64,000 nt of DNA, from assembly GCA_051294905.1 (NCBI GenBank), contig CM119373.1, positions 33,852,001-33,916,000 of the forward strand, written 5' to 3'. The stretch comes from Botryllus schlosseri. Lineage: Eukaryota. How positions within the stretch are numbered: position 1 is the stretch's first letter; each line of letters opens with the position of its first letter. The notes under the pieces are model-generated. The model had not been told where the DNA came from, did no database searches, and saw only the letters and a list, made by a program, of their open reading frames with translations. This document shows, in pieces, positions 19,110-27,324 of this stretch. Both the position numbers and the translations under genes were made by a program.

Positions 19110-22100
19110 TCGGTTGAATAGGATCCATCCAGTAAAGATATTCCAAATTGCTTCTCTGCTGATCAAAGTCTCAAAGTATAACCTTGTAATGTTTTACATT
19201 TCACGCATTCGACAGAGAGTGTGAACAAGAGTTTGACACGGATTAAATGACGCCGCCCCGGAGTCCAAAGTGATATTTTCGTACTGTGTCATCATCATCA
19301 TCATTGGTTTATTAGCAATTTTATCAGTTCAATACACCACAAATAATGCGATACAATGAAAAGACAGGAAGATGTCGAAGCGACAAGGAGTAGTCTATGG
19401 AATCGGACACCCACCATGGCCTAGGCGATGTAAAGAGGAGGCATGCACATTGAATGAAAGTAAAGAATATAGTATAGAAAAAGAAAGCGACAAGAAATAG
19501 GGCGGCATGTCATGGGAAGCGAGATCGATAGGTCATTCGTGGTCCGGTAATCTTGAGAATGGACTGTATTTATTTAGTAGTAATTGCTTGTATTTCGACT
19601 TGAATGTGGACATGCTCGTCGACTGTCGGATGGCCGGCGGGATACTGTTCCACACATCAGGTCCGGCATATTTGATGGAGCGATGATCTTTTCGGTCGAT
19701 CATATGACATTTGGACGACGTCGACGCGCGTGTGTTGTACTTGTGCGCTTTTGATTCAGAGGTAAAGAAGTCATTGAAATATTCGGGGCAACGACCGCAG
19801 TGAAACTGATACATGAACTTGTAATGTGCGTATGTTTCAATTCGATGTCGCAGATTCCGACAATAAAGTATTGCACCTGTTGTTAATCAGCAAACGAAAT
19901 TGTTGTTTCATCTTTAGTCTTGGTTACTGGAAACAATTACATTTGTAAAATATTTTCCGATATTCGCGATACGCAGAGTGATTTGTACCAAGGTGGAATA
20001 ATTTTCCAATCAAGAACATTTCAGACACGCATAGTTTTACAACTCAATATGTTATTAACAATGGTACTGAAAAGTTTGTTGCTGTCATAATAATCTTTAC
20101 CACAAAGCCGGGTCTAATTAACGCGAATAATTTAATAATCAAGTCATGATCAACTATTACATATGTCAAATCAATGTGTCAATCCTTATGTTTACATCAT
20201 GATAACTTTCAATATAACACCAGCGTTCGATTGTAAGAAATGAATACTCAACTGCGTTGGTGAGACTTTCAAAACTCGTATACCCACACATATTATGTTA
20301 ATCTCAAGTCGCCTGCACCGAGTAGTAATTACGTTTGTCTTGCTGAATATATCGAGTAGTAATTACTTTATCTTGCAGAATAGCCCGCGTAGTAATTACT
20401 TTATCTACAGAATAGAAACAACTTTTACAGTTGAATAAAAAAAAGACGAGTCCTTGGAATATGAATACAACCGAACTTGGTATGGATTTTAGGTTATAGT
20501 GATTGTATGTACTCGTGTATGCTTGGCTGTTTTTCATACTTATACTGTTTGAGTTGGTGGGGTAAGTTACAAACGGATTTACTTGACAATGTTTTTGAGG
20601 TTGACTCTTTGAATATGGTAAGATGGTAAGATGTCGGGACGTAATACTATTTCCGTTACTCAATTGCAACAAAAAATAACCCGATGACTTGTTCAAGATT
20701 TCTTTTGTTCCAAATCAATATGTGAATAATCAGCTATTGTGACAAGTTGAAATGTCGTGCTGAAATTGTGAGCGGAAACAGTAGGCGATTGTGTAAATGT
20801 GAAGACAGCGAGATAGTGATCGTGTGAATATATTAATCTGAAATGCAACGGAGGGAAAGTTTGCGAGCATGTCTGACAAGCCTACTTCAAATCGCGATAT
20901 GACAAAGTAGGTTGAAATACTTCGATTCTAATTCAACTCATCGCATTGCAACTCGATCGCGTTATGTGCAAGCCGTTGTCAAGTTGGAAATGTTTACAAC
21001 AACGGGCGATATTTCATTGATTCTATTGTGTGTAGCAACACATTAAAATATCGCGATAGTATTTACTGAAACTCTATTTGACAAACGGAAATCTGGATCG
21101 CGAATAGAGTTGTAAGTTTCAAGGATTGTTTCAAATCGATATGCGTATATTCTTGAAATGTGACTGGATGAAATTTGGTAGTCATGTTTGTCAAACCTAT
21201 TTCAATTCACACTATGCCAAAGTCAAAATATTTCATTTCGGTTTATCTCAATTTATCTATATAGTACATCTCGCGAATGGATTCCGACGCCTGGATTATT
21301 TGGTGATGCTAGAGTTGGCAAATGATAGGATGTGTGTATCTGATGAGAGTTTGATTTCAAGTTGACAAATTAACAAAATGATTGAATATTTTCGATAAAG
21401 AGATAGTTGGTATTGATTTTATAGGTGTGCAAACAGCGGCGCGAAATGTGTGAATAATCCGATGCGGCTGAATGTTGGAGTCAGTAATATTCAGGTTACG
21501 TTCGATTCAACAGATCGCGTTAAAAGGATTTCTCAAAGGATTAGAGTGCTACCGAATTAAAACATTCAGATACGAATCAACTTCAGTTGTGTAGTGAGTT
21601 TCATTTCCAGTTGACAAATTAACACATTGATTGAATATTTTCATGATTCTTATCACACAACTAAAGCCAACCTCTATTCCAGAGGTGCGAAAACACTGAC
21701 ATAGCGATCGCCAGAGAGTGTCAAATTCTTGGTTTTCGAATCACCATCTGCGACGGTTCTGTGACAAACTAATTACCAAAACATTACCTTGAGAATAAAT
21801 CATTACCCTGTAACACCAAATCATGAGAGATGGTCATGTCTGAGGTGTTATCTTGTGAGTGATCGTAGGATTTTACAAATATTTCACACCTTTTTGAAGT
21901 TTTTGTTTGTGGACGCGGTTATTGTTGGTTTTCGAATCGCCGTCTACGCCGGCTCTGTGACCAATTAATTACCAAAATATTACCACGAGAGTGATTCCTA
22001 GATTTAGCAAACTATTCCACACCTTTTTTGCTGAAAGTACGACATGCCGCCGCGACCATAAGAATAACGATATATTGGAGTAGCACTCACCGTAAACGTT

Positions 22101-22487: not shown

Positions 22488-25040
22488 ACGTATGCAGAAC
22501 TCCGTGTTATCTTGATTGCACTTCCAGCTTTTACAATTCGAATTATAACTACACAGTTTTTTTCAAATTAGATTCTAATTAAAATTACTGAATTTGAAAA
22601 ACTTGGAAATTGAAATAATTTCGAATAAGAAAGATACACAATAAAACTCAAGTCCGGCTCACATTAAATCAGAGCTCGTTCCTGTGCATATGAGAATTGA
22701 CAATGTATGTGTGCGATGCTAGTAGTAGTATAGATCGCAGGCATTGCCATTGTCTTTTATGGGCCCGCTCGTGATCTGCCGCGAAACTCGTGTTTTCTGC
22801 TGGACAGATATGATTTGTATTTAGAAAAACGATCTGCACCGATTAGGCGACGCTGTTTAATATCCGATGAGTGAGTTAAATTTCTTAGGGGTTTGATTTA
22901 GCTAGTTAATTGTCGGCGATTCAATCACATACAAGTATGATCTTTTAGTGACTGAGTATTGTGACGTCATTTACTTTGACGAATGACAATGGGAAAATTT
23001 CCAATTTCTCTGATCGTGTGCGTTGCACAAATAGTTCTAGTACACCTAATTATAGGACACATTTAGCAAACTTCGTACAAATTGTTTCTTTGCGATGGTA
23101 ACGACTTTCGGCGGCTTGGTTTTATGTCGGGAATCATTTCTGAGGGTTCAAATAACAATTTCAATCAATACTACAAACGAACAACAATACAAAACACGTT
23201 TAGTAAATTACAGGGTAGCAAGTATTTCTTTGATATTACAAGTTCAGTGTACTAGACATATCTAGTTGAATAGGATGCTTCTAGCAAACATATACCAATT
23301 TGCTTTTGTAATGATCAAAGTGTTAGAGTGTAACCTCACGATATTTTACATTTAGCACGTTCTATAGAGAGTGTGAACGGATTAAGTATTAATCACCCCT
23401 TCGATATCTAAAGCGATATTTTCACACTGTGTAATGAGTGTATATTTCAATTCGCCGTCACGAATTCCGACAGCAACGACATTGGTGTTTCATCTTTACC
23501 TTAATTCATAAATATCGCGACAGTCGGAACGGGAATCGAACGCATGCGTACTTTCAGATAGGCGACACTATAGCGATTTTATTACACCTGTGAAATACTT
23601 GAAACAGCGATTCGTGATTGTGTTAGCTATATTCATCCTCTATATCTGCGAGCACAAAGATTTCTTAACTTTGGTTACAACTCGTTCTTAACGAATTGGT
23701 CCGTGCAATCTAGAAAAGACACAAGTTGACGACGAATGATATGATTTTAATCAACTAAAAAGTCCTTTTGTTTTGGCGTTGGGTGTAATACACTTTGTAT
23801 AACAATGAATTACTTTGATTATAATTGAGTTGTCACGATTGTTCGCATTTTCGTTAAGAGTTGATTTCAAAAATGGGTATGATGAGAATATCGGATTGTG
23901 AATCAATGTCATCGTAAAGAACTTACTTGCCACACGATATCTTACATTAAAGTATACGGATACGTCTGTGAGAAATTAATTCTCGGTTATTTTTCGGGTA
24001 TTCAAATCTCGTACACTCAATGTTAATCTCAAGTCGCAAGCATTGATTTGTAGTTGTTGCGTCGTGAAAACTATCAATCGCTTTTACAGTGGAATAATTA
24101 AATATGAAGAATACAACTGATATTGATTGTTGGATGTGGTGGTTGTACAAGTGTCGTTTGTCTACTTTTGGATACATACTCTTGTGCTATGTGAGTTACA
24201 ACGGATTTACTTGGCAGTGTTTTCATAATTGACTCTTTCGAGTGTTGTAAGATGTTGAGATGTCGAGACGACGAATAGAGTTTGCATTTCCAGTTTTGTA
24301 AAAGATAACTAGTTCGTTAATAAAGTTGTAGGGTCTCATGACTTGGTATTATTCAGATCAATATGTGAATATTGCAAGCGAGCAACACTATTCGTGGGTT
24401 CACCAGGATGAATTATTAAAGTTTACCAGTTGTAGTAATATAATCAAGTAAGTGAAAATTAGGTTTAACACATGCGAATGTTTTTGTGCTTGACTCTCTT
24501 GTGTGTTCCAAACACGGTAAAATTTCGGGGTGCAGCAATGATAGCATTTTCAGAAACTCAGTTGTAACAAAAATATTTATTGACCAATGATAGAGTTGTA
24601 AGTTTCAACGTTTGTTTCAAATCAACCAGTGAATAATCCGACAACCAAGCGATCAACATTCTTAATATTATTGATATAAGACAGAACCATGTTTACAGAT
24701 GTTGAATAATATTATCTTGATGTCAAGGTGATAAATTTACGCATTCGGGTACGATCCAACTTGAATTGGGCAGTGCGTTTCATTTCGAGTTGGTAAATTA
24801 GCACATTAGTCCTGTGAGTCTTATCGCACAGCTAAAGTCGATCGCTATTCCAAGATGTGAAAACGAATCGCCGTCTATGACGGTTCAACATTTAATAGGG
24901 GTCACGTTTCCTCAAGGGTACATGGCATGGATTGCTCTATACCACATAGCTGTTTGAGGATTCGATCTATTTCTTTTTCTTTGTCTTTATTCTCGCTTTG
25001 TTTCTATCCCTTAGTCATTCTTGCTGCTATTTCTGTGCTG

Positions 25041-26530
25041 CTACCGCGAGTTATTCGGCCGCAGTTTTAATGGTTTCGCACATGCTGGACATTCTTTTAA
25101 TGCTACTTGGTCTTGTTTTAATTTAACTGTGTTTCCACATTTTACGCACAGCTGACATGTTTTCTTGCACACTGCACACTTTCTCTTTTCTCCCTGGACG
25201 GGCCTTTGTGCGACGTATACCATCGCCCCTTCCTTGCAACATGCCTTGAAGAGGTAGTGCTTTTTATAGCATGCGAGGCATGCGCTGTAATATGACTTCT
25301 TGTCATCTACCACCTTTGTGCCACAGTCTGCACATGGGAACTCCAGTGTGTCTTCCCAAGCAGGCAAGGTCAGACTCTGATTCACCCATTCTATTGTATC
25401 GTTTGCTTCAGAGTCTCTGCTTTCTTTTTCTGATCTGCTTCTGCTGCTATTTTTCATCGACAGCTTGCTGTCGCCCGTCGTAGTTCCCGATTCAGTACTC
25501 TTTCTACTGTTATTATAGCTTTCTCCACTCGTTTCTACGTGCATTCGCTGTGGCGTCAAGTGAACTATAGATAACTAACCAACTGATTCTCCAGCCGCAC
25601 CCTGATTTTCTTCCGTTACACCTTGCTGGTTTTCGTTAGAGCGGGGTTGCTCTGCCAGTTGTTCGACTTTTCTCCCATATATGGGCGTATTGTATTCATC
25701 CGCTCTTCTGTTCTGCCTTGTTTCGGTCTTTTTCTCGTTTTTTGCCGCGCCCATCTCTACCGCGTCATCTTGCGGTGGATCGGTCCAGACCAGTTTTTTC
25801 GCAACACTGAACTGTTTTTCAGCGTTTTTTGGTTCAAATGTCTCTGCATATTTGCTTGTATTGGTGTGGATTGTACTTTGCACACTGCATGTGCCCATCC
25901 TCTCGTGGCTCTGTTCATTTGACTTGGCTGCTTCTGCGGTTTTGGCATTTTTTGGTCGCATAGTTTCGCAATATGACCAGGTCTTCCACATTGCGCACAG
26001 GTAGCTATTTGCCCTCTGTGCCTGACTGCAATTTTCGTCCCATCAATGTAGATATAGGATTTGATGGGATATTCTTCCAGCGCTTTCTTCTCTATCAGTA
26101 TACTGCGTACTCCATTTTTATATTCCATATTGTCTCTTTGTTCAAAGATACTTTTGATTAATCCGTGGTTCATCCTGAAATATTTTTCTATTCTGCTATT
26201 TTCCATGCGTATCGGCACCCAGCTAAGGTACACCGCCACGTTTTCTGCTGCGTAAAGCCAATGACAGGGCAAGTCTGCGCCCTCCTTTTACTTTTGCACC
26301 ATATTTCTGTCTGCTTGGATTACAAGTCTCCTTTCTCTGAACATTATATCGATCTGTCCACTCGGGTATTTGATCAACCCTTCTATTCCCCCTTTATCGA
26401 TTCCGGCAAGCTCGAAAAACGTCAAAAGCTCCTCTCTTTCCGATATAAATCCCATTTTAACTCCCATGTCGCATGTTCTGTCGACATTCGATATAGATCC
26501 AGCCTTATTGGCATACGTTGTTTCTTCCAT
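25041..26530 (-). pseudogene. Decayed Tx1/L1-like ORF1 (gag-like CCHC zinc knuckle) with a C-terminal multi-CxxC domain, ~495 codons
   Basis: MEETTYANKA...VYLSWVP...KNGVR...IKSYIYIDG...VRHRGQIATCAQCGRPGHIAKLC. In-frame stops at 26288 and 25575 and one frameshift, probably in the A-run just after the knuckle. Confidence 0.75.
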
Positions 26531-26577
26531 TTTTCTTTTCTTCAACTGTATAGAATACGTTATCCGAGACCACCAAA

Positions 26578-26631
26578 CTAGTTGGCGTCCCCCTTTCCAA
26601 GGCCCTTGCTACCTTTTCCACGTCCAGACAT
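26578..26631 (-). pseudogene. H4: Histone H4 N-terminal fragment (17 codons plus stop)
   Basis: ATGTCTGGACGTGGAAAAGGTAGCAAGGGCCTTGGAAAGGGGGACGCCAACTAG = MSGRGKGSKGLGKGDAN*, 14/17 identical to H4 MSGRGKGGKGLGKGGAK. Confidence 0.85.
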
Positions 26632-27324
26632 GCCTGCTTGTTTTTTCCTTCTTTTTCCCGACAAAAAAGAATTTACAGTAGCGAATCGCCGTCTATGACG
26701 GTTCTGTGACAGAGTAATTACCAAAATATTACATTGTGAGCGATCGGTATCTCTGTATAACACCAAATCACGAGGGATCGCTATGTCTGAAGCATTATCC
26801 TGTGAGCGTTCGTAGGATTTTCAAATTATTTCACACCTTTTTGAATAAGCGTTAACTTCGCAAAGGATTACGGTTAGAGTAGAAATAAGTGGCAATTTGT
26901 TGGTATATAGGTCCCGCAGGTGGCGGTTCTGTTATTCGTCACTCATTGTACTTATCATGCAATTAGAGTTAGAACATAAAGCATCAAGTTGTTGTTTTCG
27001 AATCTTGATGTCGAGGTGATAAATTTACGCATTCAATTACAATTCAACTTCTGTTGTGTATTGAGCTATAGATCGATACGCCAGAAGTTGTATCTTGTGA
27101 GCGATCGTAGGATTTGCAATCTATTTCACACCTTTTTGAAGTGTTAGTCCGATACTCAGGAAATTGGGCAACAAACTGTTAAAACTGGATAAAATTACTA
27201 TATTATGAATGTAAGCCATTCTATATCACACGAGCAGAGTTGCAAATGTAGGTTGAAGCAGACGGACTGAAAACTGAGCATAATGGCATGGACTCAAGTC
27301 ACAACACTATAACTCGAACTAGAC

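What the first reader, a model, noticed from the sequence alone, without database searches (positions are those of the whole stretch)
26545..26681. Histone H4 5' end fused to the head of the retroelement-like insert
Seen: the insert begins with 50 nt of leader, then ATG and 17 codons of H4 (14/17 aa, H4-specific GLGK), then a stop. An AG acceptor-like site (ttctatacag) and the ORF1 ATG follow, 101 nt downstream of the H4 ATG and out of frame. An in-frame TTTGGTGGT (FGG, like the H4 C-terminus) follows the stop but may be chance. Inference: either (a) the parent element targets H4 genes near codon 17 and is transcribed from the H4 promoter, (b) a template switch onto H4 mRNA occurred, or (c) an H4-tail-mimic uORF is part of the element. 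Option (a) would be a histone-gene-targeted Tx1 lineage.
Basis: partly seen in the sequence, partly recalled or inferred. Interest (0 to 1): 0.78.

Follow-up and report, generated by a model that had tools for sequence, protein, structure and literature searches.

The report
Histone H4 head on a dead LINE copy
The piece of histone H4 gene at the front of this jumping-gene copy is real, and is best read as a souvenir from a retrotransposon lineage that lives inside histone H3/H4 genes and borrows their promoters, a protein-coding target I found in no description of such elements.

Summary
A 1,795-bp retroposed insert (window 24887-26681) lies between exact 23-bp target duplications. It opens with a histone H4 mRNA leader that begins at the histone cap motif. 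Then come ATG plus 16 H4 codons (14/17 aa; 46/51 nt to an H4 copy of this genome), an in-frame TAG, and ORF1 47 nt further on.

The head is not a one-off. Other copies of the ORF1 family carry H4 heads broken at the same codon 16/17, or histone H3 heads. Intact full-length relatives sit inside H3 genes of two histone clusters, with 22-bp and 18-bp target duplications made of H3 codons. One of them carries nested H3/H4/H3 heads.

The window copy is a dead, off-target derivative that lacks ORF2.

Limits:
- No H4 gene interrupted in place exists in this assembly.
- RNA reads showed no chimeric transcript.
- Tx1 membership was not tested.

This scan already reached the same lineage from other DNA of this genome (s1-286532, s1-286511). 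I found no published histone-gene-targeting non-LTR element.

The parts
26682..26704 (-). Upstream copy of the 23-bp target-site duplication. Its last 5 nt (ATTCG) equal the first 5 nt of histone mRNA leaders, giving microhomology at the 5' junction.
   Evidence: Exact repeat, 0 expected by chance. 55 near-copies genome-wide, often as inverted pairs 11-20 kb apart, so it is a subterminal motif of a DNA transposon.
26632..26681 (-). Histone H4 mRNA leader (5' UTR), 50 nt.
   Evidence: Alignable to the leaders of the H4 copy L009 (C16), the head of L011 and L016.
26581..26631 (-). H4 start codon plus 16 codons (MSGRGKGSKGLGKGDAN).
   Evidence: Translation. 46/51 nt to the C16 H4 copy and 38-40/51 to the cluster H4 genes.
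26578..26580 (-). In-frame TAG that closes the H4-tail reading frame, at or within one codon of the H4/element junction.
   Evidence: A stop 0-3 codons after the histone part is seen in every headed copy.
26531..26577 (-). 47-nt spacer between the stop and the ORF1 ATG. It holds the FGG-like letters and the 'acceptor-like' letters.
   Evidence: The nearest relative L002 has only 23 nt here.
25041..26530 (-). Degenerate ORF1, with one in-frame stop and frame changes. It has an N-terminal domain, a CCHC knuckle and a Cys-rich C-terminal domain.
   Evidence: 51% aa identity to ORF1 of the intact element L070 over residues 3-198.
24887..25040 (-). 3' UTR ending in ...AAATGTT, without a poly(A). 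ORF2 is absent between ORF1 and this tail.
   Evidence: The same tail type ends L002, L014, L003, L020, L022 and L070.
24864..24886 (-). Downstream copy of the 23-bp target-site duplication.
   Evidence: Empty-site comparison.

Best explanation
The H4 head is a relic of co-transcription. The insert descends from a lineage of APE-type (L1-superfamily) non-LTR retrotransposons. Their productive copies sit, in sense orientation, in the first ~110 nt of replication-dependent histone H3 and H4 genes.

Proposed mechanism:
1. The histone promoter makes an RNA that starts at the histone cap site and runs through the leader and the first 8-22 tail codons into the element.
2. The element begins with, or soon provides, an in-frame stop. 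The short histone-tail frame therefore ends and ORF1 is read just downstream (inferred).
3. Full-length reverse transcription carries this head to every new site.
4. A copy that lands in another histone gene becomes a new source and adds a further head layer. A copy that lands elsewhere is dead on arrival.

The window copy is of the dead kind. It is an ORF2-less, already decayed derivative, mobilised in trans (inferred). Its source RNA started at an H4 promoter, and it landed in a subterminal motif of a DNA transposon with a 23-bp duplication.

What is shown: the anatomy, the recurrence of heads, the in-place H3 insertions, and the nested heads. What is inferred: residence in an H4 gene, promoter use, and reinitiation.
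For: 1. Seven independent 5' ends begin at ATTC of the conserved CATTC motif upstream of H3/H4. These are the window, L011, L008, L006, the nested leader in L003, and the H4 retrocopies L009 and L025.
2. H4 heads break at codon 16/17 in the window/L002 pair, L011, L005/L006 and the inner head of the C1 copies. They derive from two H4 allele and leader types, and the element-side sequence differs.
3. L003 and L010 carry H3 heads. L003 also has a second nested H3 leader.
4. An intact element (ORF1 plus a 1128-aa ORF2 with Exo_endo_phos, RVT_1 and zf-RVT) lies inside an H3 gene of the C8 tandem array. H3 codons 1-22 come first, then the element starting with TGA, then its ...AAATGTA end, then H3 from codon 16. 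The duplication is 22 bp.
5. A second, independent H3 insertion lies in the C1 cluster (two copies, in a duplicated 20.6-kb unit). Its duplication is 18 bp, H3 codons 3-8.
6. Those C1 copies carry H3(1-8) + H4 leader + H4(1-16) + H3(18-22) + stop + element, which records serial stays in histone genes.
7. In L002 the 3' end of a related autonomous copy abuts H4 codon 10 of the next copy's head. That is 23 nt before the head's end, as staggered cuts at an H4 site would predict. It is the only such junction in the genome.
8. H3/H4 5' regions make up roughly 3 kb of 495 Mb, so two in-place hits among about ten independent events are not chance.
Against: - All 14 full-length H4 genes in the assembly are intact, and no element 3' end is followed by the H4 remainder. 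H4 residence is therefore not seen directly. One histone array ends at a contig end and may be incomplete.
- The window-type leader occurs only in retrocopies and heads, not next to an H4 promoter.
- In 4 RNA runs, all 50 reads at H3 codon 22 continued as normal H3, and none crossed into the element.
- Insertion positions differ (H3 codons 3-8, H3 codons 16-22, H4 around codons 10-17) and many copies are off-target, so specificity is regional and not exact.
- H4 mRNA retrocopies exist in this genome, so H4 mRNA is available as an RT template.
Confidence: 0.72

Rival explanations
1. Template switch. At the end of reverse transcription the RT jumped from the element RNA onto an abundant H4 mRNA and copied it to its cap. 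This would create an H4 head without the element ever having been inside an H4 gene.
For: - The heads end at the mRNA cap site, as run-off on an mRNA would give.
- H4 mRNA is reverse-transcribed in this genome: full and 5'-truncated H4 retrocopies exist.
- The inner H4/H3 junction of the C1 copies lies in a GCGCC microhomology shared by H4 codons 15-16 and H3 codons 15-17.
- No H4 gene is interrupted in place.
Against: - The same H4 breakpoint recurs with different H4 alleles, different leaders and different element-side sequence.
- Known RT jumps go end-to-end, not to one internal point of the acceptor (established knowledge on R2 and L1 RTs).
- It leaves unexplained how promoter-less elements get transcribed.
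- The in-place H3 insertions with target duplications show that histone genes really are hit.
- The L002 junction fits a cut in H4 sequence.
Confidence: 0.13
2. Inherited functional module. An H4 head was captured once and is kept because it serves the element, either as a 5' UTR with promoter or translation-control activity or as an H4-tail-mimic micropeptide. The similar breakpoints would then reflect common descent.
For: - The heads are retained across subfamilies that are only 66-82% identical.
- The histone frame is always closed by a stop within 0-3 codons, and ORF1 starts 5-47 nt later, which looks selected.
Against: - The leaders fall into two unrelated H4 types and some copies carry H3 heads, so the heads were acquired repeatedly.
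- The tail peptide is mutated in the copies (S8, D15, N17 here; C4 and R14 in L005), so the peptide is not conserved.
- Copies outside histone genes look dead.
- No promoter evidence exists.
Confidence: 0.12
3. Chance resemblance or an assembly chimera.
For: None found.
Against: E 1e-19 to 6e-23 for leader plus head. Exact flanking duplications. The junction stretch is held by runs of at least three studies.
Confidence: 0.01

Closest known systems
Tx1-clade target-specific non-LTR retrotransposons (Keno in U2 snRNA genes, Tx1 in a piggyBac element, Kibi/Koshi in microsatellites; PMC4494074, PMC4640811)
   Same: APE-type ORF2 with a C-terminal zinc motif, ORF1 with CCHC, preference for multicopy targets, no need for an own promoter.
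   Different: The target here is the coding 5' region of protein-coding Pol II genes (H3/H4), a target absent from the published lists. Several positions are used, not one. Clade membership by RT phylogeny was not tested.
R2/R1 in 28S rDNA
   Same: Residence in a tandem multigene family, dependence on host-gene transcription, and co-transcribed target sequence at the 5' end that can help 5' junction formation (as summarised in PMC4494074).
   Different: R2 removes the upstream rRNA with a ribozyme and uses a restriction-like endonuclease. Here the host leader and codons stay on the RNA, are copied to new sites, and are dealt with by an in-frame stop.
SINEU (snRNA-derived heads) and the SVA subfamily with a MAST2 5' transduction (PMC4494074)
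   Same: Retroposons whose 5' heads come from a host gene, with recurrent 5' additions giving layered heads. Transcription from an upstream host promoter is proposed.
   Different: Here the headed elements are LINEs and their ORF1-only derivatives, the heads include start codons and coding sequence, and source copies inside the donor gene family are actually seen.
U6-L1 type template-switch chimeras
   Same: Host RNA sequence fused to the 5' side of a LINE-derived cDNA.
   Different: Those carry a whole small RNA joined at variable points to truncated partners. Here only the 5' part of an mRNA is present, and it breaks at a recurrent point.

Membership tests
L1-superfamily (APE-type) non-LTR retrotransposon | ORF2 with N-terminal APE endonuclease, RT and C-terminal zinc-binding motif | tested here: met
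   Met in the intact relative L070 (Exo_endo_phos 3e-14, RVT_1 2e-35, zf-RVT 2e-6). The nearest named hits are L1-type ORF2s at 26-29%. The window copy itself has no ORF2, so it is a non-autonomous derivative.
L1-superfamily (APE-type) non-LTR retrotransposon | Insertion by target-primed reverse transcription, leaving target-site duplications | tested here: met
   Duplications of 23 bp (window), 22 bp (C8), 18 bp (C1) and at least 14 bp (L003).
L1-superfamily (APE-type) non-LTR retrotransposon | Poly(A) or A-rich 3' tail | tested here: not met
   All copies end in ...AAATGT followed by T, A or G, with no poly(A). This suggests recognition of a specific 3' UTR.
Tx1 clade | RT phylogeny places the element with Tx1, Keno and relatives | not tested
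   No labelled Tx1 reference sequences were available in the tools. Only the architecture fits.
Target-specific non-LTR retrotransposons | Independent insertions in the same multicopy target | tested here: met
   Two independent in-place insertions in H3 genes of different clusters. The nested heads record further events.
Target-specific non-LTR retrotransposons | One fixed insertion position, with most copies in the target | tested here: not met
   At least three positions are used: H3 codons 3-8, H3 codons 16-22, and H4 around codons 10-17. Many copies lie outside histone genes (window, L002, L003, L005/6, L008, L010, L011).
Target-specific non-LTR retrotransposons | Co-transcription with the target gene | tested here: inconclusive
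   5' ends lie at the histone cap motif in seven copies. No junction-spanning RNA read was found in 4 runs.
Template-switch chimeric retrocopies | Variable junctions, each chimera a one-off | tested here: not met
   The H4 junction recurs at codon 16/17 in at least three settings.

The most novel reading that the evidence does not exclude
This is a LINE lineage specialised on a protein-coding multigene family. It homes to the tail-coding 5' ends of H3 and H4 genes and uses the host promoter, cap site and start codon. It ends the host frame with its own first codon and then starts ORF1. The histone head it carries may itself guide integration by homology, which would explain the H3-to-H4 switches at shared GCGCC/GGNGGCAAR motifs and the layered heads.
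Probability: 0.5. Interest if true: 0.82.

Novelty: new variant of a known kind. Interest (0 to 1): 0.72.

Why it matters
Known site-specific non-LTR retrotransposons live in RNA genes, spliced-leader exons, repeats, transposons or telomeres. A lineage that lives in histone genes would extend the 'safe harbour in a multicopy gene' strategy to Pol II protein-coding genes.

It would also show how an element copes with sitting inside an open reading frame, through an in-frame stop followed by restart. The layered heads would give a readable record of successive host genes.

Such a lineage could offer S-phase or germline-timed expression for free, and it might affect histone gene dosage.

The window copy adds three points:
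- The H4 branch exists.
- ORF1-only derivatives of it propagate.
- Headed RNAs also land off-target.

Tried and rejected
- **In-place H4 insertion.** I looked in three ways: an H4 protein map and two junction patterns. None was found apart from the L002 element-to-head junction.
- **RNA support.** Four raw RNA runs were laid on the C8 H3/element junction. Only normal H3 reads were found at the junction. There were a few partial reads on the 3' part of ORF1 from other copies. No verdict on expression follows from this.
- **DNA runs for the window junction.** Runs of at least three studies of the same organism label hold it. This gives no information on age.
- **Cross-species context.** The best ORF2 relative (52%) has no retrievable DNA. 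ORF1 found no relatives in the large protein set.
- **Shared nick motif.** GGNGGCAAR lies before the cut in H3 (C8 site) and in the inferred H4 site. It does not hold for the C1 H3 site or for off-target sites, so I do not claim it.
- **H4 3' fragments L038-L042** as possible downstream halves of interrupted genes. Rejected, because there is no element similarity upstream. They belong to other repeats.
- **C6:640-700 kb as a decayed histone cluster.** Rejected, because no other histone-unit sequence is present there.
- **Further loci.** The 5' ends of the L002 upstream copy, of the L022 element and of the C9 copy therefore remain unseen.
- **Literature.** No histone-gene-targeting non-LTR element was found.

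Full report
**Observation.** Read on the minus strand, window 26704-24864 has this layout:
- a 23-bp sequence at 26704-26682;
- a 1,795-bp insert at 26681-24887;
- the same 23-bp sequence again at 24886-24864.

The repeat is exact, with none expected by chance. A diverged paralogue of the surrounding repeat at window 21555-21898 has the two flanks next to each other. The segment is therefore an insertion with a target-site duplication. The 23-mer recurs about 55 times in the genome, often as inverted pairs 11-20 kb apart, so the target is a subterminal motif of a large DNA transposon. This agrees with the scan's note s1-278737.

The insert reads as follows:
- a 50-nt leader;
- ATG at 26631 and 16 further codons (MSGRGKGSKGLGKGDAN, 14/17 to H4);
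- TAG at 26580-26578;
- a 47-nt spacer;
- the ORF1 ATG at 26530.

ORF1 has a CCHC knuckle and a Cys-rich C-terminal domain. It is broken by a stop and frame changes. After ORF1 only ~154 nt of 3' UTR follow, ending in ...AAATGTT without poly(A). There is no ORF2.

**Is the head H4?** Yes.
- Leader plus head match an H4 copy on contig C16 (L009) at 82% over 108 nt.
- The coding part is 46/51 nt identical to that copy and 38-40/51 to the H4 genes of the tandem clusters.
- The genuine H4 and H3 genes have a conserved CATTC motif 55-70 nt before the ATG. From my own knowledge, this is the classical cap-site motif of invertebrate histone genes.
- The window leader starts with ATTCG, which overlaps the last five bases of the target duplication. 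That is a typical microhomology at a full-length 5' junction.
- Six other independent 5' ends start at the same ATTC: L011, L008, L006, the inner leader of L003, and the H4 retrocopies L009 and L025.

The insert is therefore a full-length copy of an RNA that began at an H4 transcription start.

**Do other copies carry heads?** The ORF1 family has few copies.

| Copy | Head |
|---|---|
| L002 (82% identical, also ORF1-only) | H4 codons 10-17, then the same AAC TAG junction |
| L011/L020 | Window-type leader, 16 H4 codons, then TAG |
| L005/L006 (one old event, later segmentally duplicated) | H4 head ending AAG TGA; leader and codon choices of a different H4 type, sharing an 11-nt block with the C8-array H4 leader |
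| L003 | H3 head MARTKQTARKSTGGK plus two codons and a stop; behind it a second H3 leader |
| L010 | H3 head MARTKQTARTKQTARKS, one codon and a stop |
| L008 | 42 nt identical to the C8 H4 leader and no histone codons |
| L004/L007/L012 | An unidentified leader |

The head is not universal, but histone heads are the rule.

**Source copies inside histone genes.** A search with the RT part of L020 found intact ORF2s inside both histone clusters.

In the C8 tandem array (5.8-kb units), one H3 gene is interrupted. It reads promoter, leader, H3 codons 1-22, and then an element that opens with TGA. The element has a ~500-aa ORF1 and a 1128-aa ORF2 (APE, RT, zf-RVT), and ends in ...AAATGTA. H3 then resumes from codon 16 and runs to its stem-loop. 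The duplication is 22 bp.

In the C1 cluster, two copies in a duplicated 20.6-kb unit interrupt H3 elsewhere. The 5' junction lies after codon 8, and the 3' end is followed by H3 from codon 3, so the duplication is 18 bp.

These C1 copies carry layered heads in this order:
1. H3 codons 1-8;
2. an H4 leader and H4 codons 1-16;
3. H3 codons 18-22;
4. TAA;
5. the same element 5' end as in C8.

This records successive stays, or at least successive acquisitions, in H3, H4 and H3. The inner H4 junction again lies at codon 16. It is independent of the window's junction, because the sequence behind it is H3 and not the element.

**How specific is the lineage?** The H3/H4 5' regions in the assembly total roughly 3 kb of 495 Mb. 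Two in-place hits plus several recorded ones, among about ten independent events, cannot be chance.

Specificity is nevertheless regional. Three positions are used and many copies lie elsewhere. I could not define a nick motif that fits all sites.

In L002, the 3' end of a related autonomous copy abuts H4 codon 10 of the next copy's head, 23 nt before that head ends. This is the spacing expected for staggered cuts at an H4 site, and it is the only such junction in the genome. Its reading is not unique.

**What is not shown.**
- All 14 complete H4 genes are intact, and no element end is followed by the H4 remainder. One array stops at a contig end, so copies may be missing.
- The window-type leader is found only in heads and in an H4 retrocopy.
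- Four RNA runs gave 50 reads at H3 codon 22, all continuing as normal H3, and none entering the element. These were small samples of bulk libraries, so this is no evidence against expression elsewhere.
- H4 mRNA retrocopies exist in this genome. The inner H4/H3 junction lies in a shared GCGCC. A template switch onto H4 mRNA therefore remains possible for the H4 heads.

I rate template switching lower for four reasons. The breakpoint recurs with different H4 alleles. Known RT jumps are end-to-end. The elements need a promoter. And H3 genes are demonstrably hit.

**Mechanism proposed.** Shown steps:
- headed full-length retrocopies;
- in-place H3 insertions;
- nested heads;
- a stop 0-3 codons after every histone part;
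- ORF1 starting 5-47 nt later.

Inferred steps:
- transcription from the histone promoter;
- termination-reinitiation to translate ORF1;
- trans-mobilisation of ORF1-only derivatives (window, L002, L003, L010);
- recognition of the conserved ...AAATGT 3' end by the RT.

**Comparison and novelty.** The architecture is L1-superfamily. Tx1 membership is untested. Functionally it resembles R2/R1 and Tx1-clade elements that rely on a transcribed multicopy target, and it resembles SINEU and SVA-MAST2 in carrying host-derived heads (PMC4494074). Published target lists name rRNA, snRNA, tRNA and spliced-leader genes, transposons, microsatellites and telomeres (PMC4640811). My searches found no histone-gene target.

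The scan's own follow-ups on other windows of this genome reached the same reading (s1-286532, s1-286511). I had found the nested head and the interrupted H3 genes independently before that look-up. This window adds three points:
- the H4-headed branch;
- its ORF1-only derivatives;
- an off-target landing with a clean duplication.

Noticed in passing
L021 6098-6470 (C16:14268097-) and L025 1470-1860 (C3:15780217-): Complete H4 mRNA-like copies run from the cap motif to ~20-27 nt past the stop, with no stem-loop. Each sits at the centre of long inverted repeats. The C16 copy has a frameshift and a premature stop. They look like cDNA captured inside foldback or deleted DNA transposons.
   Followed up: partly
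L041 1200-1750, L042 1450-2000; L038/L040: 5'-truncated H4 fragments (from residue ~27, or ~9) are fused behind a Harbinger-like transposase 3' end or another repeated unit. Each is present in at least two copies. They show no similarity to the histone-homing element.
   Followed up: partly
G000 C10:7545548-7566108: Four related LINE ORF2s (36-37% identity to the query, three with open frames of 1128-1175 aa) are spaced ~6-7 kb apart on one strand. Such a tandem pattern suggests another multicopy target.
   Followed up: no
L004, L007, L012 (C1:6.30, 5.79, 6.31 Mb): These ORF1 copies share a different, unidentified ~60-nt leader before the ORF1 ATG. It has no match in the histone cluster loci.
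   Followed up: partly
L018/L019 (C15:4.21 Mb, C1:13.85 Mb): A segmental duplication of more than 5.5 kb, 92% identical, includes an old H4-headed copy and MITE insertions. One ~150-bp MITE gave more than 1000 candidate sites.
   Followed up: partly
G000 C8:28388894-28400613: There is a second double-length gap (11.7 kb) between successive H4/H3 pairs of the C8 histone array.
   Followed up: no
L031 3050-3286 (ORF1 3' part of the C8 element): RNA run X13 has partial reads here. They show fixed differences and a 67-nt stretch replaced by 6 nt, so some diverged copy of the family is transcribed somewhere.
   Followed up: no
L022 5475-5545 (C6:645475-645543): The 3' end of a 43%-related intact element abuts a window-type H4 leader plus 7 codons. 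That piece is in turn cut off by unrelated sequence. The structure is not resolved.
   Followed up: partly
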